This document shows, piece by piece, positions 7,993-27,365 of a DNA stretch of 64,000 nt. The position numbers and the translations under genes were made by a program. Each line of letters begins with the position of its first letter. Position 1 is the stretch's first letter. A model generated the notes under the pieces. That model had not been told where the DNA came from. It saw only the letters and a program-made list of their open reading frames with translations, and did no database searches. The stretch lies in sequence record PV654397.1. One strand, given 5' to 3'.

Positions 7993-8167
7993 TGATCACA
8001 TCAAGTACTTTGTCCAGTTTCTTACCAATACTATCCTTTGGTTTATCACTATTCTGGAATACATTAGTACTGCAATACTCAGGACGGGTATTAGGGAACT
8101 TCTCGTTCATCCAGGAGTGACCATATACACCAAGAATGATACCTACGATAAGAATGATGATTTGCAT
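7985..8167 (-). CDS. small membrane-anchored protein
   Basis: N-terminal hydrophobic helix; GAGG SD. Confidence 0.7.
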   Translation of the reverse strand: MQIIILIVGIILGVYGHSWMNEKFPNTRPEYCSTNVFQNSDKPKDSIGKKLDKVLDVINE

Positions 8168-8181
8168 GATATATCCTCTAA

Positions 8182-8976
8182 TTAAATTACATATGGTTTA
8201 TAGTAATGAATCTCGTTTGCGATTGCAGTGAAAACTTTATTATTAAATCTTTCACCATAATCACGAAGTGATTCACCTTCTTCGCTTTCAATAAAGTAAT
8301 TATATACTGGTAGACGTGCGGTGTCAACACCTATAAATGATTTCATGTAAATTTGTACTAAACGATTCATTCCTTCATTTAAGCATTGCACCTCAAAGTG
8401 CTTGATACCTTTGTCTAAATGTTTGAATGCATTAATGATACCACGTTTAAAATCACGCTGCATAGTACTGAATAGATTCTCAGGGAACACTGTAATAGGT
8501 GACATTGATTTAAGAATGTATGTATCTTTAGCATTCTTAATATACTCAATGAAGCAGTAGTTAACGTCAGGCTCGATAGAACGATCAGCGTTATGATACC
8601 AGTGCTTAAACTCACTGTACTCAGCAAACTTATGCTGGCGTAATGCGTTACAATCCTCACACAATGCAGTCATGTTCTCTTTATCATTACCGCCCTGAAG
8701 ACAGTCCAGTACATTATGGTCTAACGTCATGCGTACAAGACGTTTCCCTTTAAGTACATAAGGTCTGAATTTATAACGGTCTTTAGTACTGTGCTTATGT
8801 AAAGTGAATACCACATTGGATTCACCACAACAATCACATTTAAAGCCATCACGTGACATTACATGAATGAGTTTTCGAGTATTTGGGCCGAACTCAGATT
8901 TAGTAATGTTGCCGACAATTTCTGATGGGTCGTAGTATTTTGAATTCCGGCGAATCAATTCATCTATAGTGCTCAT
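8182..8976 (-). CDS. HNH endonuclease domain protein
   Basis: CDCC...TLDH...GGN...N...LCEDCN HNH/zinc pattern. Confidence 0.7.
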   Translation of the reverse strand: MSTIDELIRRNSKYYDPSEIVGNITKSEFGPNTRKLIHVMSRDGFKCDCCGESNVVFTLHKHSTKDRYKFRPYVLKGKRLVRMTLDHNVLDCLQGGNDKENMTALCEDCNALRQHKFAEYSEFKHWYHNADRSIEPDVNYCFIEYIKNAKDTYILKSMSPITVFPENLFSTMQRDFKRGIINAFKHLDKGIKHFEVQCLNEGMNRLVQIYMKSFIGVDTARLPVYNYFIESEEGESLRDYGERFNNKVFTAIANEIHYYKPYVI

Positions 8977-8977
8977 T

Positions 8978-9208
8978 TTACATTAATCCTTCTATGCTAC
9001 AACCAATAAGTACTTTTTTCACTTCAATAACTCGTACCAAATAGAATCCATTTGAAAAGTTAAAACTATACATTTGTACTAAGGCATCTGCTTCAGATTT
9101 CGCACGGATACATGATAGATATAGTTCTCGTATATCGTCATCCAACGATGCTTGTTTCTCGTCATTGATAACAATAGAACGAATCTCAAAACGAACACCA
9201 TAACTCAT
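8978..9208 (-). CDS. hypothetical protein
   Basis: 76-aa ORF. Confidence 0.65.
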   Translation of the reverse strand: MSYGVRFEIRSIVINDEKQASLDDDIRELYLSCIRAKSEADALVQMYSFNFSNGFYLVRVIEVKKVLIGCSIEGLM

Positions 9209-9414
9209 TCTGTTTGTCCAACAATTAGTTTTTCTTTAGTATTACTATTGTAACACCACATTAATTCTTCACCAACTGTTCTAAGTGAAACGCTGTTTAC
9301 TTGTTCATACGTACTGTCACGTACTGCAATGCATTGATTCATTGAATTCATTGGGGTGATTTGTACACCAGATTGTGGTGAAAGAGCAATAATTAAAAAG
9401 ATTACTGAATTCAT
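9205..9414 (-). CDS. hypothetical protein
   Basis: 69-aa ORF, GAGG SD. Confidence 0.7.
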   Translation of the reverse strand: MNSVIFLIIALSPQSGVQITPMNSMNQCIAVRDSTYEQVNSVSLRTVGEELMWCYNSNTKEKLIVGQTE

Positions 9415-9478
9415 TAGATATTCCTCGATGGTTAATCATCCATCTCTTCGAGATGTCTGTTCGCTTCTAATACTACGT

Positions 9479-9507
9479 ATTCTACGCGAATGAATCATAA
9501 CTGTCAA
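9479..9507 (-). promoter_or_regulatory. sigma70-type promoter
   Basis: TTGACA-17-TAGAAT. Confidence 0.8.
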
Positions 9508-9545
9508 GGACTTTTAATATTGACGGGATTTGAGGAAGGGATTTT

Positions 9546-9971
9546 TCTTCCCCCCGCACGGAGGGAAATTTGACGCTGATGGTATCAGAGCTATTGCATT
9601 GAAGATTACTCATAACGAGTGCGAAAGCGGGTCATCCTGTTTCTCTCTACTTCAGTTTCATATGACGGTCTACACTTTTAAACATAGTGTATCTTCATTA
9701 AGTATCTATGCAATCAAATACTTAATGTGAGTACTCAAATTTTGGACGCAACTTTCCTGTACAAAATTCGATAACTCTCCCTTAGATAATTCGTAAGGTG
9801 TTATCCTTATATGTCTATCGAGGAACCACCAGCTATCCTAACGTGGTTCTTTATACAGCCGCATTGCCGTGAGGGGTTCAAACTATGCCCACATCTAACG
9901 GGTTTCTTTTGCTGTTCGCTACAATGAAAAGCTCATCTATCCTTTACATTTTCAAGTGAAGTAGGGGAAGA
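9546..9971 (+). ncRNA. large structured non-coding RNA candidate (~430 nt), family unassigned
   Basis: ends pair (TCTTCCCC 9546-9553 / GGGGAAGA 9964-9971), nested long-range and many local helices, GNRA loops; G-U pairs favour + strand. Confidence 0.65.
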
Positions 9972-10041
9972 TTGTCAGTACCAGTACTGTCATTGTGATT
10001 GTACATAGATCATTGTATCACCATTAATAAATTTGTCCCAT

Positions 10042-10072
10042 AAAAAAAAGGGCTGACCGAAGTCAACCCTTT
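10042..10072 (-). terminator. intrinsic terminator after sigma gene
   Basis: AGGGTTGAC-TTCG-GTCAGCCCT plus T8. Confidence 0.85.
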
Positions 10073-10076
10073 AATC

Positions 10077-11045
10077 TTAAAAATCTTCGAACTCATAACC
10101 TTTTGTCTTAACCATCTTACGCAGTCGTTCCATTGCTTCAGAGTACTTACGGTGCAATGAAGAACGAGCAGTCATGACCTTACCCTTCTCATCTTCAAAA
10201 CCACTCTCAATGATTTCTCGTAGCGTTTCTGGTTCAGAATAAGAACCAATACCATGTACACGTTCAATCAATTCACGGTCTTTGGCAGATAGGTTACTCA
10301 TCATTTCTGCAATACTTTGTACCAGTGGGGTACTGACAGTTTCTACGCCTAAGTTGTAATCAGGTTCAACTGAAGTAACAATGTCAGATAATGTACTTTC
10401 TGAATCATTACTCATTTTCATATTCAATGCTACATAAGTGTTATTGTAAGTTAGACAATTCTTAACGTGTTGAATCTCAATACCAGTCTCTTTTGACACC
10501 ATCTCAGGAGTTGGGTATTTACCATGTTTCCTTTGATACTCTTCTACACAACGTTTCACATAAATGTTATTAACACTCATATAACGTGGGAAATGCACTA
10601 GATAATTAGCATCTGCACTTTCGTTATAGATTGTCATGTACACAGTTGTTGTTGCATATGTAATGAACTTAACATTTTTGGTAGTGTCGAACGTATGAAT
10701 TGCTCGCATTAAACCTTCAACACCATAAGAAATCTTATCTTCAAATGGGATAAAACATGTACACTTACGTGCAACACTTACTACCATTGGATAGTTGTAG
10801 CGAACCAAAAGGTCAATGTTCTTTTCAACGTCAATACCATCACGCACTGCTTGGATGAGCATTTCATTCGTTATCCCTTTAGGGCGAGTTAAGCTGATAC
10901 CTGTTTTTGGTTTCTCAAACTTGTGACCGTCATGTTCTTCTTCTTCTTCGACGGAATCAAGAGCCTCTAATACGTTGACTTCTTCACTAGCAAAACACTC
11001 ATCCAGTACTTCTTCAGAAATTGCATTTAAATCAAGCTTTTTCAC
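10077..11045 (-). CDS. RNA polymerase sigma70-family factor
   Basis: region 2 LVRYNYPMVVSVARK...EDKISYGVEGLMRAIHTFD...KFITYA; region 3 PTPEMVSKETG; region 4 ETLREI. Confidence 0.9.
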   Translation of the reverse strand: MKKLDLNAISEEVLDECFASEEVNVLEALDSVEEEEEHDGHKFEKPKTGISLTRPKGITNEMLIQAVRDGIDVEKNIDLLVRYNYPMVVSVARKCTCFIPFEDKISYGVEGLMRAIHTFDTTKNVKFITYATTTVYMTIYNESADANYLVHFPRYMSVNNIYVKRCVEEYQRKHGKYPTPEMVSKETGIEIQHVKNCLTYNNTYVALNMKMSNDSESTLSDIVTSVEPDYNLGVETVSTPLVQSIAEMMSNLSAKDRELIERVHGIGSYSEPETLREIIESGFEDEKGKVMTARSSLHRKYSEAMERLRKMVKTKGYEFEDF

Positions 11046-22786: not shown

Positions 22787-22858
22787 AGGTCAATATCAGA
22801 ATTGCACTGATTATTCAGACTTACAAGGTCCGTGTTATACTCTTTTAACTAATCGACC
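22787..22858 (-). tRNA. trnT: tRNA-Thr(UGU), atypical T-loop, no encoded CCA
   Basis: acceptor GGTCGAT/ATTGACC; anticodon arm CGGAC-CTTGTAA-GTCTG; T arm ATCAG-TGCAATT-CTGAT. Confidence 0.7.
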
Positions 22859-22864
22859 TGAGAA

Positions 22865-22919
22865 GTAAGATAACCAACAAGTCTCCATACTCTTTCGCAT
22901 TGAGGGGAGGCCATCTTAC
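22865..22919 (-). ncRNA. small structured element just upstream of tRNA-Thr
   Basis: 11-bp stem GTAAGATGGCC/GGTTATCTTAC (two G-U) enclosing an inner hairpin. Confidence 0.35.
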
Positions 22920-22920
22920 G

Positions 22921-22972
<52 letters not shown>

Positions 22973-23087
22973 GCCAAGAGTCGGCATAGGTGCAGCACTA
23001 CAAAGTTCTTCAAGCTGCTTGGTAGTTTCTTTACTTACTTTCATATTGACCTCGTTAGGTTAAAAACCCCAGTTTTCTTCTTGAACC

Positions 23088-23828
<741 letters not shown>

Positions 23829-23839
23829 TTAAATACACT

Positions 23840-24241
23840 CTAGTAGTTTAAGTCAGCGGCGTTGAAGACACCAAGTGAAGTCTTACCACGTAGTTTAGGT
23901 GAAATGACATATTTTGTCAATTTCTTTTTACCGTACCAGTGATTGAATTCGTCTTCAGTAACATGTGGGTTCTGGAAATCGTATTCACGTTTCTTATGAA
24001 GTTTTTTAGCTTGTTCTGCAATCTTAGTTCGTTGATCTTCTGGAATGTCGAATGTATTGTTACGTTTGCACCATTCGTGCACTAATGCTTCCAGAAGGAA
24101 CTGTTCAGTTTCTTTGACTAGAGTGATTTTAGTCAAGCCTTTTTCGATGTTCATATAATCATCGACATATCCATTCCAAATAACAATCTCTGGATTGCCG
24201 TCAATCTCTTGAAGCATTTTGATCAAGTCATTCTTTTTCAT
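23840..24241 (-). CDS. conserved phage hypothetical protein
   Basis: 133 aa, AGGA SD. Confidence 0.75.
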   Translation of the reverse strand: MKKNDLIKMLQEIDGNPEIVIWNGYVDDYMNIEKGLTKITLVKETEQFLLEALVHEWCKRNNTFDIPEDQRTKIAEQAKKLHKKREYDFQNPHVTEDEFNHWYGKKKLTKYVISPKLRGKTSLGVFNAADLNY

Positions 24242-24249
24242 TTAAATTC

Positions 24250-24519
<270 letters not shown>

Positions 24520-24522
24520 AAA

Positions 24523-25065
24523 TTATTGTCGTTCATCATCATGAATCTCACGATGACAATTTGCACAAACCATAATACATTTATCCAGTTCTATTTTAAT
24601 TTTTTCAAAAGAACGAGTTGCACCTTCTTGACTAATTGAATAATCTTTCTGTGAAGGATCAACATGATGGAATTCTAATGCGGCAATGCATTTATCATAT
24701 CCACACTTTTCACAACAACCGCCTTTGTATTCAACGGCTAGTATTTTTAATTTTCTACGTCTATCAGAAACACGTTGACTGTCACATTTTAAACATTTCC
24801 ATTTACCTTGTGAATTTAATTCATAATTCTTATTGTGTATTTCACAAAATCGCATTTCATTGGTTGATTTTGGTCGTTTAACACCATGTGATTCAACGAT
24901 ATCATTTATTCTTGATCTATTACACTTATATTCTTTGGCTAAACCGTAAATTGGCATACCATTTAAATATTTTTGAATTATTTCATTCTCTGGTAATTTA
25001 GAACTTTTAGCCTTTAATGATTCAGCTATTTTTTTACGTGTTTCTTCTGATTGTTTTCGTCCCAT
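24523..25065 (-). CDS. HNH homing endonuclease with NUMOD3-like N-terminus
   Basis: MGRKQSEETRKKIAESLK; YKGGCCEKCGY...LEFHHVDP...ELDKCIMVCANCHREIH. Confidence 0.85.
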   Translation of the reverse strand: MGRKQSEETRKKIAESLKAKSSKLPENEIIQKYLNGMPIYGLAKEYKCNRSRINDIVESHGVKRPKSTNEMRFCEIHNKNYELNSQGKWKCLKCDSQRVSDRRRKLKILAVEYKGGCCEKCGYDKCIAALEFHHVDPSQKDYSISQEGATRSFEKIKIELDKCIMVCANCHREIHDDERQ

Positions 25066-25121
25066 GAACCTTAGACCTCATAATATCCTGTATGATATTA
25101 TTTATTGTTCCGAGGTTCATG
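25063..25121 (-). promoter_or_regulatory. start-codon-sequestering hairpin enclosing a late-promoter-like AATAAATA
   Basis: 9-bp CATGAACCT/AGGTTCATG stem (25063-71 / 25113-21); AATAAATA at 25099-25106. Confidence 0.65.
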
Positions 25122-25130
25122 ATTGTTTTG

Positions 25131-25214
25131 CTGGTAGTACTGGAGTCGAACCAGTCTTGTCATTTCTGACACGGATTAACAGTCCGTTGCATAAGGCCGA
25201 TATGCTAACTACCA
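25131..25214 (-). tRNA. trnN: tRNA-Asn(GUU) with long variable arm, no encoded CCA
   Basis: acceptor TGGTAGT/ACTACCA, G73; ACGGA-CTGTTAA-TCCGT; variable stem GTCA-GAAA-TGAC; ACTGG-TTCGACT-CCAGT. Confidence 0.85.
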
Positions 25215-25223
25215 TTTGTTTTA

Positions 25224-25305
<82 letters not shown>

Positions 25306-25314
25306 GAATTTTGA

Positions 25315-25558
<244 letters not shown>

Positions 25559-25574
25559 ATATCAATACTTAATA

Positions 25575-25952
<378 letters not shown>

Positions 25953-25967
25953 ATCACCAACTTTAAT

Positions 25968-26310
25968 TAAAAAAAATGGATGGTGACGCTTTTAAACGCC
26001 GCTGTTAATTCAGCTTTATAACCACCCGTTTTAACTTGCCTTTCGGCTACCTTGACGTGGGGCGTACAGGCTACTAAAAGCAACTACTGTAAACATATTT
26101 CCACGCCTTACCCTTTTAAATAAAAATCCATCCGGTTTTCCAGTTTGGTGAAGGATAGTCACCTCTAGTTTAAACCTGCTAGTCAAGTAATAATTGCCTA
26201 TCGTCCAATTATCAAACCCGTCTAGGTTAACATTCACCACTTCCTAGAGTACCAGAGATCTTGTTCTGGATTGCATCGACGTAACTTACACCATATACGT
26301 CTGATTGTGG
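25968..26310 (-). ncRNA. stand-alone structured non-coding RNA candidate (~340 nt)
   Basis: own consensus promoter upstream, GC stem plus T8 at 3' end, at least 8 helices, GCC-GAAA-GGC loop; G-U pairs favour - strand. Confidence 0.65.
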
Positions 26311-26315
26311 AATTC

Positions 26316-26340
26316 ATTATATCAGTACTGAACTATTTAG

Positions 26341-26344
<4 letters not shown>
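26316..26344 (-). promoter_or_regulatory. sigma70-type promoter with CAGTACTG in spacer
   Basis: TTGACT-aaatagttcagtactga(17)-TATAAT. Confidence 0.8.
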
Positions 26345-26936
<592 letters not shown>

Positions 26937-26940
<4 letters not shown>

Positions 26941-27097
26941 ATTCGTACCAGTAGTTCAATTAAGTACATTTCATATGCTGGATCGTTGATAAGTTTATCA
27001 TACAGATGTGGCTCTGAAATGAATTCCCAATGATACTTTAGCCATTTACCGATACCCGAATATCTAAAATTAATGTCATTCATCCATTCTTCATGTG

Positions 27098-27101
<4 letters not shown>
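26937..27101 (-). CDS. MTHEEW-family small protein (54 aa)
   Basis: MTHEEWMNDINFRYSGIGKWLKYHWEFISEPHLYDKLINDPAYEMYLIELLVRI. Confidence 0.75.
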
Positions 27102-27262
<161 letters not shown>

Positions 27263-27279
27263 GGTTTAACCTTTAATTG

Positions 27280-27365
<86 letters not shown>

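What the first reader, a model, noticed from the sequence alone, without database searches (positions are those of the whole stretch)
9546..9971. ~430-nt ornate non-coding RNA candidate, probably antisense to the surrounding genes
SEEN: a ~650-bp gap with no credible CDS between the sigma gene and ORF 9205-9414. The ends pair (TCTTCCCC 9546-53 / GGGGAAGA 9964-71). A second long-range helix pairs GAGCT 9588-92 with AGCTC 9930-34 and CATTG 9597-601 with CAATG 9922-26. Inside are CATTAAGTAT/ATACTTAATG (9696-9727), AATTTTG/CAAAATT (9738-68), GATAAC..CCTTA/TAAGG..GTTATC, AGGAACCAC/GTGGTTCTT (9821-51), TACACT/AGTGTA, ACAGC/GCTGT, CTTTAC/GTGAAG, and GNRA loops GC-GAAA-GC (9621-28) and CC-GTGA-GG (9867-74). 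Four stems gain G-U pairs only on the + strand. INFERENCE: a closed multi-domain RNA of the size seen in large ornate phage RNAs (ROOL/GOLLD class). I could not match it to RNase P, tmRNA or intron consensus motifs by eye, so it may be a new class. An alternative local hairpin (GGAAG 9534-38 / CTTCC 9547-51) competes with the closing helix.
Basis: partly seen in the sequence, partly recalled or inferred. Interest (0 to 1): 0.87.

Follow-up and report, generated by a model that had tools for sequence, protein, structure and literature searches.

The report
New structured RNA of jumbo phages
The gap holds a gene for a roughly 480-base, intricately folded non-coding RNA of a family nobody seems to have described, kept in three to five copies in a group of giant bacterial viruses and also carried by small mobile islands in gut bacteria.

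Summary
The window is an Asteriusvirus jumbo coliphage, 100% identical to phage WPEC5 here. The 662-bp gap (9415-10076) has no coding signal. It holds a conserved element of about 475 nt (9521-9995).

- **Family:** there are 77 distinct homologues. Rak2-like jumbo phages carry 3-5 diverged copies per genome. Small integrase-bearing islands of Enterobacteriaceae carry one copy each.
- **Structure:** ten helices (55 pairs) are 95% paired, against 33-46% in slid controls. Compensatory changes occur at 35 pairs. One pseudoknot is proven and a second is likely.
- **Known families:** no Rfam family matches, and I found no paper describing it.
most local hairpins are confirmed. The closing helix, the second long-range helix and one GNRA hairpin are not conserved; the other GNRA hairpin lacks support.
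- **Strand:** probably reversed. A sigma-70 promoter with an extended -10 (59 of 74 copies; window 10039-10012) points into the element on the minus strand. The best-resolved helix is 94% paired on minus and 79% on plus. The RNA would then be co-directional with its neighbours, not antisense.
- **Function:** unknown. My leading guess (about 0.35-0.4) is a ColE1 RNA II-like primer RNA of a replication origin that the islands have borrowed. A trans-acting ornate RNA is nearly as likely.

The parts
10012..10039 (-). Sigma-70-type promoter of the RNA: -35-like GGGACA (10039-10034), a 16-nt spacer, then an extended -10 TG-A-TACAAT (10020-10012). The predicted start is near 10005.
   Evidence: Found by the scan. 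The same promoter (ATGAAAC or TGGGACA, 17-18 nt, TGnTATAAT) sits at the same place in 59 of 74 copies. The other 15 have a TATACT or TATAAT -10 without the TG.
9521..10005 (-). Predicted RNA. The conserved core is 9521-9995, and the 5' end is inferred from the promoter. The 3' end is not mapped. Conservation stops at ...CAAATCCCGTCA (the reverse complement of 9521-9532).
   Evidence: nhmmer E-values run from 1e-65 to 1e-143 against 77 distinct homologues. Covariation is shown. There is no coding signal. The strand assignment rests.
9976..9989 (-). 5'-terminal hairpin, CAGTAC/GTACTG as written on the plus strand. A hairpin of variable sequence followed by a conserved CTGnnTGA-type motif sits at this position in most copies.
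   Evidence: Seen in the alignments. On unique helices, wobble pairs number 4 on plus and 9 on minus.
9937..9964 (-). Hairpin Pu: CTA 9937-39 / TAG 9962-64 plus CTTTAC 9942-47 / GTGAAG 9956-61. The loop ACATTTTC (GAAAAUGU on the minus strand) is conserved.
   Evidence: Compensatory variants include CUG/CAG, CCAUC/GAU(A)GG, CCCUC/GAG(U)GG, GUAUC/GAUAAC and UCAAU/AUUGA.
9918..9932 (-). Hairpin Pt: GCT 9918-20 / AGC 9930-32.
   Evidence: All 39 sequences are paired at every position, and two of the three pairs covary with three and two pair types.
9855..9915 (-). Three nested helices. Pq is ACAGC 9855-59 / GCTGT 9911-15. Pr is CCGT 9867-70 / ACGG 9898-9901. Ps is a variable-length hairpin at 9871-9897. 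Invariant strands GCCGCATTGCCG and GGGTTTCTTTTGC lie between them.
   Evidence: Pq is 100% paired with three covarying pairs, and Pr is 99.4% paired. A hairpin forms at the Ps position in most homologues despite different sequences and lengths.
9821..9851 (-). Hairpin Ph: AGGAACCAC 9821-29 / GTGGTTCTT 9843-51.
   Evidence: It is 96.2% paired and six of eight pairs have compensatory changes.
9770..9819 (-). Junction region. Hairpin Pn' is GTAAGG 9793-98 / CCTTAT 9805-10. Its loop (GTTAT 9800-04) pairs with ATAAC 9771-75 (Pm), a likely second hairpin-loop pseudoknot. It is followed by the near-invariant block CTTATATGTCTATC.
   Evidence: Pn' covaries: six sequences have GUAGG/CCUAU. Pm variants include GUGCA/UGCAC, GAUGCA/UGCAUC, GCCAAA/UUUGGC and AUCGC/GCGAU.
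9738..9768 (-). Modular hairpin Pmod: AATTTTG 9738-44 / CAAAATT 9762-68, with a conserved GGACGnAnCTnTnnTGTAC interior. Some paralogues carry it at a different place or lack it.
   Evidence: In the 208k copy of ECO103, in L028, L016 and in one Yen9-04 copy the module is inserted into hairpin Py. The last three then lack it at the usual site, and the 128k copy lacks it altogether.
9696..9727 (-). Hairpin Pk: 12 bp, 9696-9707 / 9716-9727. Seven bases of its 8-nt loop (9708-9714) form helix Px with 9593-9599, which makes a pseudoknot.
   Evidence: All 12 pairs of Pk and all 7 pairs of Px have compensatory changes. Pk is 94.2% paired on minus and 78.8% on plus. RNAduplex energy is better on minus in 36 of 39 sequences.
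9593..9691 (-). Core domain enclosed by Px. It holds Py (ACTC 9608-11 / GAGT 9617-20), Pz (GTCAT 9631-35 / ATGAC 9662-66, with an invariant 26-nt loop CTGTTTCTCTCTA...) and Pw (TACAC 9671-75 / GTGTA 9687-91).
   Evidence: Px is 99.3% paired, Py 97.3% and Pz 99.5%, all with compensatory changes. Pw variants were read by eye and by script.
9540..9575 (-). 3'-proximal GC-rich hairpin Pa. On the minus strand the family consensus is UUUCAUUCCCC-UGC-GGGGGGAUGAAA, with an invariant G run. The window lineage has the variant TTCCC 9548-52 / GGGAA 9563-67.
   Evidence: GGGGGA is invariant in all 39 sequences. Pairing is 83.4% on minus and 80.3% on plus, so this helix does not decide the strand and shows little compensation.
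9479..9507 (-). The next minus-strand promoter, TTGACA 9507-02 / 17 nt / TAGAAT 9484-79. It lies immediately after the end of the RNA and serves ORF 9205-9414 and the genes after it. No intrinsic terminator lies between the RNA and this promoter.
   Evidence: It matches the consensus at 11 of 12 positions. Terminator scans found no site within about 60 nt of the RNA's 3' end on the minus strand; the only hit there is a hairpin inside the RNA of the CBB copy.
10047..10072 (-). Intrinsic terminator of the upstream sigma-factor gene. It separates that gene's transcript from the RNA unit.
   Evidence: Found. The weak Rfam 'hits' STnc390 and sraA are this terminator.

Best explanation
**What it is (high confidence).** It is an independent gene for a non-coding RNA with a core of about 475 nt (450-610 nt across the family). 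The RNA has many helices, at least one proven pseudoknot and long invariant unpaired strands.

It belongs to a family I could not find described anywhere. Rak2-like jumbo phages (Asteriusvirus, Mimasvirus, Eneladusvirus and relatives) keep 3-5 diverged copies at conserved, widely spaced sites. Small integrase-bearing islands of Enterobacteriaceae carry one copy each.

**Strand (about 0.75).** It is transcribed on the minus strand, the same sense as its neighbours. Host sigma-70 RNA polymerase would start at the promoter at 10039-10012, just after the sigma gene's terminator. No intrinsic terminator of its own was found.

**How it most likely works (inferred, about 0.35-0.4).** It would be the primer RNA of a replication origin, in the manner of ColE1 RNA II or the R-loop origins oriF and oriG of T4.
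- Early host transcription makes a folded RNA.
- Its 3' part, which holds the invariant G run, stays hybridised to the template just upstream of an A+T-rich stretch and two conserved hairpins.
- Its 3' end primes leading-strand synthesis, co-directional with the genes.
- The islands, which have no recognised replication gene among those annotated, would use the same module to be replicated after excision, by host enzymes or by an infecting jumbo phage.

**Shown:** the fold, the family, the copy number, the promoter and the contexts. **Inferred:** the strand (strongly) and the origin function (weakly).

The confidence value given for this entry applies to the whole statement, including the origin mechanism. 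On its own, the claim that this is a real structured RNA family stands at about 0.97.
For: **Fold.** 55 pairs are 95.2% paired against 33-46% in slid controls, 35 pairs have compensatory changes and 0 of 500 shuffles reach this. RNAalifold gives 23 of 49 pairs with compensation. The pseudoknot Px x Pk has compensation at all 19 pairs.

**Not coding.**

**Family and copy number.**
- BLAST found 62-78 phage records with 3-5 places per genome.
- There are four copies in phage ECO103 4-12-1, at 18, 128, 208 and 261 kb. All have the same orientation and sit inside gene blocks of that orientation.
- Seven bacterial loci and 53 metagenome loci were also found.

**Strand.**
- A conserved promoter on the minus strand.
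- Pk is 94.2% paired on minus against 78.8% on plus.
- With scoring neutral between G-U and A-C, wobbles in Pk number 6 on plus and 51 on minus. In Pw they number 3 and 14, and in Pmod 16 and 34.

**Origin idea.**
- A strong sigma-70 promoter and no terminator at the RNA's end.
- An invariant G run near the 3' end.
- About 150 nt beyond the 3' end is conserved too, with two hairpins of variable sequence, in both phages and islands.
- Diverged copies are kept at syntenic, spaced positions across genera. This argues that position matters.
- The island core is resolvase, a membrane protein, a Ner-like protein, a cI-like repressor, the RNA and an integrase, with no recognised replication gene.
- Island and phage copies interleave in the tree.
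- There is precedent for small islands moved by jumbo phages (PMC12595487).
Against: **Against the strand call**
- There are no expression data.
- In the right half the wobble evidence is equivocal. Alignment folding gives -22.25 kcal/mol on plus and -21.67 on minus.
- Three invariant G-U pairs and the short form of hairpin Ps favour the plus strand.
- Pa does not discriminate.

**Against the origin idea**
- GC skew follows transcription only and shows no shift at the four copies. This was to be expected for a T4-like phage and is not informative.
- As far as I know, the R-loop origins of T4 need no elaborate RNA (my own knowledge).
- About 15 helices, pseudoknots and invariant strands of up to about 20 nt look more like a ribozyme or ribonucleoprotein core than a primer.
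- No antisense regulator comparable to RNA I was found.
- The window copy's downstream stretch is not unusually A+T-rich.
- Several island proteins have no known function, so a replication function among them cannot be excluded.
- The mapped 3' end, an R-loop and origin activity are all untested.
Confidence: 0.38

Rival explanations
1. A trans-acting ornate RNA in the sense of ROOL, GOLLD or OLE. It would be a stable, free, folded RNA serving as a ribozyme, as the scaffold of a ribonucleoprotein or of an RNA-only assembly, or as a decoy or anti-defence factor. The phage would make it early in infection. The islands would make it to exploit or to interfere with the phage.
For: - The fold is complex: about 15 helices, one proven and one likely pseudoknot, a peripheral module that moves or is lost, and optional extra hairpins.
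- Unpaired strands are near-invariant between genera, for example CTTATATGTCTATC, GCCGCATTGCCG and AAGCGGGT.
- It has its own strong promoter.
- The E. coli island also carries candidate defence genes, PDC-M45.
Against: - No terminator or defined 3' end was found.
- A trans-acting RNA gives no obvious reason to keep 3-5 copies only 60-70% alike at conserved, spaced positions.
- No partner protein is shared by phages and islands. The constant island neighbour F1 has no phage homologue.
- There is no similarity to ROOL, GOLLD, OLE, HEARO or any other Rfam model.
Confidence: 0.33
2. A cis-acting leader. The RNA would be the structured 5' part of the transcript of the genes that follow, for example a processive antitermination element like put of phage HK022, or a regulatory leader.
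For: - In the phages the order on the minus strand is terminator, promoter, element, then genes, with no terminator after the element.
- In the E. coli island, genes of the same sense follow the element.
Against: - A second strong promoter lies between the element and the next gene.
- In most islands, and at the 128-kb copy and its orthologues in Munch and XaC1, the next gene is convergent, so there is nothing to lead.
- As I recall, known antitermination RNAs are about 70-130 nt, not 480 nt (my own knowledge).
Confidence: 0.1
3. One reading: the functional RNA is the plus strand, antisense in orientation to its neighbours, or both strands give functional RNAs.
For: - On the first ten helices G-U outnumbers A-C on the plus strand, 73 to 42, or 66 to 11 without Pk.
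- Invariant G-U pairs lie at the bases of Ph and Pn'. Pb changes from A-U to G-U.
- Ps, Ph and Pr fold better on plus.
- The right half has an excess of G+U on the plus strand.
Against: - No plus-strand sigma-70 promoter was found in the window, and the -10-like hexamer there is not conserved in the islands.
- The plus-favouring G-U pairs are invariant pairs or lie in helices without compensatory support.
- Pk is 78.8% paired on plus against 94.2% on minus.
- The conserved promoter points the other way.
Confidence: 0.15
4. Not an RNA at all, but a DNA-level element, a degenerate gene or a mobile repeat. Possibilities include a packaging site, protein-binding sites, a cruciform or a miniature transposable element.
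For: - It is multi-copy and moves between phages and islands.
- The UE-S1 record annotates part of it as a repeat region.
- Homing-endonuclease-like genes lie near several copies.
Against: - Selection on base pairing is strand-biased. In Pk the wobbles number 6 against 51, whereas a double-stranded cruciform would show none of this bias.
- There is no coding signal.
- The copies are old (60-70% identity) and syntenic between genera, so they were not recently transposed.
- A phage reported to have fixed terminal repeats (PMC12805682) has no use for four packaging sites.
Confidence: 0.04

Closest known systems
ColE1/pMB1 RNA II, the plasmid replication primer (comparison from my own knowledge)
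   Same: - An RNA of roughly 500 nt made by host sigma-70 polymerase from a strong promoter.
- An elaborate fold that is needed for function.
- No terminator before the origin.
- A G-rich segment involved in the persistent hybrid.
- Conserved hairpins downstream.
- It lets a DNA with no initiator protein replicate.
   Different: - There is no sequence or model similarity. Rfam's RNAI and related models do not hit.
- No antisense regulator was identified.
- This RNA has pseudoknots and far stronger conservation of unpaired strands.
- It sits in a 350-380 kb phage in several copies.
- Origin activity is untested.
T4 R-loop origins oriF and oriG (comparison from my own knowledge)
   Same: - Several origins per genome in a T4-like replication system.
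- Each origin is a promoter whose transcript stays hybridised and primes leading-strand synthesis.
- One copy lies next to baseplate, endonuclease VII and gp46-like genes, much as T4 origins lie among such genes.
   Different: - The T4 origins are a promoter plus a short unwinding element, with no large conserved RNA fold that I know of.
- Here 480 nt of covarying structure is conserved.
ROOL, GOLLD and OLE, the large ornate bacterial and phage RNAs
   Same: - Similar size class: 450-610 nt here, against about 600-800 nt for those.
- Many helices with conserved junctions.
- Found in phages and mobile elements.
- Function unknown.
   Different: - No match to any Rfam family, at curated thresholds for the window and eight homologue loci and at E up to 10 for the window region.
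- Different hosts: Enterobacteriaceae and their jumbo phages.
- Several diverged copies per genome at fixed positions.
- No terminator was found.
PA5oct ncRNA001-004, RNA-seq-defined non-coding RNAs of a related jumbo phage (PMC7318152)
   Same: - Four unannotated transcribed regions without ORFs in a jumbo phage related to the Rak2 group.
- One is 451 nt long and highly expressed early.
   Different: nhmmer finds no similarity to ncRNA001 or ncRNA002. ncRNA003 and ncRNA004 were not fetched.
Satellite islands moved by jumbo or virulent phages: I55 with JPTI55 (PMC12595487) and PICMIs (PMC10803314)
   Same: Small islands with an integrase and defence cargo and no transfer genes, depending on a large virulent phage.
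   Different: - Those islands occur in Pseudomonas and Vibrio.
- A term search of the I55 paper found no mention of a structured element shared by island and helper.
- Here the shared RNA module is the only link, and mobilisation is untested.

Membership tests
ROOL (Rfam) / GOLLD (Rfam) | A match to the family covariance model (sequence plus consensus structure). | tested here: not met
   cmscan of the whole window and of eight homologue loci at gathering scores, and of 9350-10120 at E up to 10, gives no hit to either family.
RNase P RNA, tmRNA, SRP RNA, 6S RNA | A match to the Rfam models. For tmRNA, also a tRNA-like domain and a tag reading frame. | tested here: not met
   There are no Rfam hits. 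ARAGORN finds no tRNA or tmRNA in 9300-10150. The only SRP hit is the host ffs gene beside the E. coli island.
Group I / group II introns | A match to the intron core models, and insertion in a host gene whose exons join up. | tested here: not met
   There are no Rfam hits. The element is intergenic in every context, with unrelated flanks.
HEARO / IscB or TnpB omega-RNA | A structured RNA encoded next to, and in the same sense as, an IscB, IsrB or TnpB nuclease gene, and a match to the Rfam HEARO model. | tested here: not met
   - There is no Rfam hit.
- Neighbouring genes differ between copies.
- The 264-aa protein annotated as an HNH endonuclease in related phage records, encoded at 8182-8976, has no Pfam match.
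- It is not a constant neighbour.
ColE1-type primer RNA (RNA II) | A sigma-70 promoter about 0.5 kb upstream of the origin, directing a structured RNA with no terminator before the origin. | tested here: met
   The promoter is conserved in 59 of 74 copies, with related forms in the rest (window). About 480 nt of covarying structure follows. No terminator lies at the 3' end.
ColE1-type primer RNA (RNA II) | Homology to known RNA II or RNA I sequences and an antisense regulator RNA I. | tested here: not met
   No Rfam family, RNAI included, matches. No conserved plus-strand promoter was seen. It therefore cannot be filed as a member; at most it works in a similar way.
ColE1-type primer RNA (RNA II) | A persistent RNA-DNA hybrid, an RNase H-processed 3' end used as a primer, and origin activity. 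| not testable with these tools
   This needs replication assays, 3'-end mapping and R-loop mapping.
T4-type R-loop origin | A promoter followed by a DNA unwinding element, and replication starting there early in infection. | tested here: inconclusive
   - The promoter is present.
- The stretch after the RNA is A+T-rich in many copies by eye, but not in the window copy.
- GC skew gives no signal.
- Initiation itself cannot be tested here.
Protein-coding gene | A conserved open reading frame and 3-base periodicity of substitutions. | tested here: not met
   The median longest stop-free run is 79 codons. There are 8-13 stops per frame. Variability by phase is 0.219, 0.217 and 0.242.

The most novel reading that the evidence does not exclude
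The module (promoter, 480-nt pseudoknotted RNA and downstream hairpins) is a new kind of RNA-primed replication origin, or alternatively a new large ribozyme or ribonucleoprotein RNA. Rak2-like jumbo phages would use it at several sites. Small integrase, cI and Ner islands of Enterobacteriaceae would have captured it repeatedly. That would make these islands the first recognised satellites, or parasites, of this jumbo-phage group, with a structured RNA as the hijacked part.
Probability: 0.3. Interest if true: 0.9.

Novelty: categorically new. Interest (0 to 1): 0.8.

Why it matters
Large structured RNAs with strong covariation are rare, and each known class has turned out to do something fundamental or is still an open puzzle.

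This one offers three things:
- It is conserved across several genera of 350-380 kb phages that infect E. coli, Salmonella, Klebsiella, Erwinia, Yersinia, Serratia, Cronobacter, Pectobacterium and Xanthomonas.
- It is present in several diverged copies at fixed genomic positions, which is unusual for an RNA gene and points to a position-dependent role.
- It is shared with small chromosomal islands that otherwise look unable to replicate or to move on their own.

If it is an origin RNA, it would explain how these jumbo phages start replication and how islands ride on them. If it is a trans-acting RNA, it is a new ornate class in hosts that can be handled genetically, since E. coli K-12 is a host of several of these phages. 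That would make experiments far easier than for ROOL, GOLLD or OLE.

Tried and rejected
- **Rfam at every threshold** and **ARAGORN**: nothing relevant. The weak hits are the sigma gene's terminator.
- **Single-sequence folding**: z-scores of -2.2 and -1.6, so it says little on its own.
- **Self-BLAST in the window**: there is no second copy within these 64 kb. The paralogues lie elsewhere in the genome.
- **PA5oct ncRNA001 and ncRNA002**: not homologous.
- **Literature searches** for jumbo-phage non-coding RNAs, Asteriusvirus ncRNA, and the CBB, Sharanji and UE-S1 papers: no description found. The supplements of the large phage-RNA survey PMC10690425 are not held.
- **Hammerhead-like CUGACGA motifs:** rejected. 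The GAAA part is not conserved and no Rfam hammerhead model hits.
- **Group I topology:** rejected. There is no P8-like hairpin between the crossing strands, and the element is intergenic.
- **A closing helix GAG/CUC**: rejected. It overlaps the covarying helix Pt and shows uncompensated changes.
- **My own first conclusion that the plus strand is the RNA**: withdrawn. It rested on invariant G-U pairs and on helices without compensatory support.
- **GC-skew test for origins**: uninformative.
- **A partner protein shared by islands and phages:** tblastn with the island membrane protein found nothing. Pfam and PADLOC gave only a cI-like repressor, a Ner-like protein, recombinases and the candidate defence genes PDC-M45.
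- **A strand test on hairpin Pa**: inconclusive.
Full report
**Where we are.** The window is an Asteriusvirus, a Rak2-like jumbo coliphage. Positions 9400-10080 are 100% identical to Escherichia phage WPEC5 and 89-99.7% identical to about 35 other phages of the 121Q/PBECO4 group. On the minus strand the local order is:
- the sigma-factor gene (10077-11045);
- its intrinsic terminator (10047-10072);
- a 662-bp gap;
- ORF 9205-9414, ORF 8978-9208, and a 264-aa gene annotated as an HNH endonuclease in related phage records (8182-8976).

The gap has no coding signal. Across 39 homologues the median longest stop-free run is 79 codons, there are 8-13 stops per frame, and variability shows no 3-base periodicity. 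Folding the window sequence alone gives z = -2.2 on plus and -1.6 on minus, so comparison with relatives was needed.

**A family, not a singleton.** BLASTN found the element in 62-78 phage records at about 70% identity outside Asteriusvirus. These include Mimasvirus (CBB, GAP32, XbC2), Eneladusvirus (BF, fHe-Yen9-04, the pEa_SNUABM phages), Salmonella phages Munch, 7t3 and SE_PL, a Klebsiella phage, Erwinia phage Kaldavass and Xanthomonas phage XaC1. Each genome has 3-5 places, nearly all unannotated.

I fetched one whole genome, ECO103 4-12-1, and found four copies at 18, 128, 208 and 261 kb. They are 60-72% identical to one another. All have the same orientation, and each sits inside a long block of genes of one orientation. 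Individual copies are syntenic between genera.

**Also in bacteria.** A search of complete E. coli genomes gave an unexpected result. Strain LR-29-1 has a full-length copy (nhmmer E = 5e-113) in an island of about 10.5 kb between ybaA and ffs. The island has an integrase (split by IS3), a resolvase and the candidate defence genes PDC-M45.

Pattern scans added six species-representative genomes: Citrobacter amalonaticus, Enterobacter chinensis, a Buttiauxella genome, two unnamed Enterobacteriaceae, and one 2.8-kb contig binned as Clostridium. They also added 53 metagenome loci. In all there are 77 distinct sequences.

The islands share a compact core: a resolvase, a small secreted protein, a membrane protein, a Ner-like regulator (HTH_35), a cI-like repressor (HTH plus S24 peptidase), the element, and a serine or tyrosine integrase next to the chromosomal flank. 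They have no recognisable replication, packaging or transfer genes. In a tree, island copies interleave with phage copies in at least two places.

**Structure.**
- On 25 sequences RNAalifold predicted 49 pairs, 23 of them with compensatory changes.
- On 39 sequences below 95% identity, ten helices (55 pairs) are paired in 95.2% of cells, against 33-46% when the partners are slid.
- 35 of these pairs have compensatory changes.
- 360 cells are changed on both sides, against 34-60 in the slid controls. No shuffle of 500 reaches the observed values.

Two helices cross. These are ATTGCAT 9593-99 / ATGCAAT 9708-14, and the hairpin at 9696-9727 whose loop is that second strand. Every pair of both helices covaries, so this pseudoknot is proven.

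A second arrangement of the same kind is likely. The loop of hairpin GTAAGG/CCTTAT pairs with ATAAC 9771-75.

Peripheral parts come and go, as in other large RNAs:
- an optional A-rich hairpin;
- a short or long form of one hairpin;
- a 30-nt module, AAAUUUUGGACG...GUACAAAAUU, that sits at different places in different paralogues.

Between the helices lie near-invariant strands, including CTTATATGTCTATC, GCCGCATTGCCG, AAGCGGGT and ACGGTC.

- Confirmed: the hairpins at 9696-9727 and 9821-51, ACAGC/GCTGT, TACAC/GTGTA, GATAAC/GTTATC and CTTTAC/GTGAAG. AATTTTG/CAAAATT (9738-68) recurs in most copies with weaker support.
- Not conserved: the closing helix TCTTCCCC/GGGGAAGA, which is absent even in UE-S1 and G17.
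- In conflict with covarying helices: GAGCT/AGCTC, CATTG/CAATG and CC-GTGA-GG.
- Without support: GC-GAAA-GC.

**Known families.** Rfam gave nothing at gathering scores for the window or for eight homologue loci, and nothing at E up to 10 for the region. ARAGORN found nothing. The RNA-seq-defined non-coding RNAs 001 and 002 of phage PA5oct are not similar. I found no paper describing the element.

On the alignment, G-U outnumbered A-C on the plus strand. That count is dominated by three invariant G-U pairs at helix ends and by helices that lack compensatory support.

Two later results point the other way.

*1. The promoter.* A sigma-70 promoter on the minus strand lies immediately to the right of the element and points into it. 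It has a -35-like ATGAAAC or TGGGACA, a spacer of 17-18 nt and an extended -10 TGnTATAAT. It is present in 59 of 74 copies, and the other 15 have a TATACT or TATAAT -10. This holds in phages and islands alike. In the window it is GGGACA 10039-34 and TGATACAAT 10020-12. I found no comparable plus-strand promoter.

*2. The wobble pairs.* With scoring neutral between G-U and A-C, the hairpin at 9696-9727 is a continuous 12-14 bp helix only on the minus strand.
- Wobbles number 6 on plus against 51 on minus.
- RNAduplex energy is better on minus in 36 of 39 sequences.
- On mirror-image alignments the same 12 pairs are 94.2% paired on minus and 78.8% on plus.
- Other left-half helices lean the same way.

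The right half is equivocal. Alignment folding gives -21.67 kcal/mol on minus and -22.25 on plus. Non-invariant wobbles slightly favour minus, and one hairpin favours plus. Hairpin Pa does not decide.

I put the minus strand at about 0.75. The RNA is then co-directional with its neighbours, not antisense to them.

**The transcription unit.** On the minus strand the order is: upstream terminator, promoter, RNA of about 480 nt, and then, about 14 nt later, the -35 of a second near-consensus promoter (TTGACA 9507-02 / TAGAAT 9484-79) for the next genes. No intrinsic terminator ends the RNA in the window or in the CBB and Enterobacter loci.

About 150 nt beyond the RNA's 3' end is conserved in phages and islands. 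It contains two hairpins whose sequences vary while the pairing is kept. An invariant G run lies in the last hairpin of the RNA.

**What does it do?** Nothing here shows a function.

*Leading guess: an origin primer RNA.* Three facts make me lean towards a position-dependent, cis-acting role.
- Several diverged copies are kept at conserved, spaced sites.
- There is a strong host-type promoter and no terminator.
- The module is present in islands that have no recognised replication gene.

The best-fitting known mechanism is an RNA-primed origin, like ColE1 RNA II or the R-loop origins of T4. I hold this at about 0.35-0.4. GC skew neither helps nor hurts.

*Close rival: a trans-acting ornate RNA* (ribozyme, ribonucleoprotein or decoy), at about 0.33. 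The complexity of the fold and the invariant unpaired strands speak for it.

*Other rivals.*
- A leader or antitermination role, at about 0.1. It is weakened by the second promoter and by contexts where the next gene is convergent.
- The plus-strand reading, at about 0.15.
- A DNA-only element, at a few per cent.

A recent report that a jumbo phage moves small integrase-plus-defence islands in Pseudomonas (PMC12595487) makes a satellite relation plausible. It says nothing about this element.

**Verdict.** The finding is real and, as far as I can tell, new. It is a large pseudoknotted RNA family shared by Rak2-like jumbo phages and enterobacterial islands. The function is open. The experiments that would settle it are simple and use laboratory E. 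coli strains.

Noticed in passing
window 22787-27365 (minus strand): A cluster of five tRNA genes, the only Rfam hits in the window at gathering scores.
   Followed up: no
window 8182-8976 (-); L009 28961-29932; L011 9481-10137; L012 9539-10324: Homing-endonuclease-like genes lie within 0.1-1.2 kb of all four paralogous copies. They show HNH motifs or repeated zinc ribbons with a Vsr-like nuclease domain. They may use the highly conserved RNA gene as a homing target, or this may be chance in a genome full of such genes.
   Followed up: partly
Escherichia virus TH47 (MT446416.1) 145933-147284, hit H35: The orthologue of the window copy matches in three pieces spread over 1352 bp instead of 681. 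This suggests an insertion or a replacement inside the element in that phage.
   Followed up: no
L037 (E. coli LR-29-1, NZ_AP027515.1 about 3472900-3483700): An island of about 10.5 kb between ybaA and ffs. It carries the RNA, an IS3-split integrase, a resolvase, a ParB-like protein, the candidate defence genes PDC-M45 (dual OB domain plus DUF488) and DUF4326. Only 2 of 5426 complete E. coli genomes have it.
   Followed up: partly
L021, L024, L084, L085, L091, L092 and L087, right of the element: In some copies the promoter is followed at once by a GC-rich hairpin and a run of T before the conserved RNA begins. An example is GGACGGTACAGTGTATCGTCCTTTTTT. This looks like a terminator or attenuator in the leader, and might regulate how much RNA is made.
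   Followed up: no
Pmod module: window 9738-9768; L011 about 8130-8170; L028, L016 and L014 inside hairpin Py: The same hairpin module of about 30 nt (AAAUUUUGGACGnAnCUnUnnUGUACAAAAUU) occupies different positions in different paralogues, and sometimes occurs twice. It looks like a transposable structural or protein-binding module.
   Followed up: partly
window 9601-9606 and 9948-9953: GAAGAT and ATTTTC are complementary, and both lie in conserved unpaired stretches (family consensus GARAAU / AUUUUC). This may be a tertiary pairing between the two halves, but only one-sided changes were seen.
   Followed up: partly
Sixteen Vibrio phage records matched the 681-bp query but not the 491-bp core. 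Their similarity must therefore lie in the flanks (9400-9499 or 9991-10080), not in the RNA.
   Followed up: no
L042 (DPOH01000171.1, a 2.8-kb contig binned as Clostridium sp.): A copy nearly identical to the Enterobacteriaceae island type sits on a short contig assigned to Clostridium. This is most likely a binning error in that metagenome-assembled genome.
   Followed up: no
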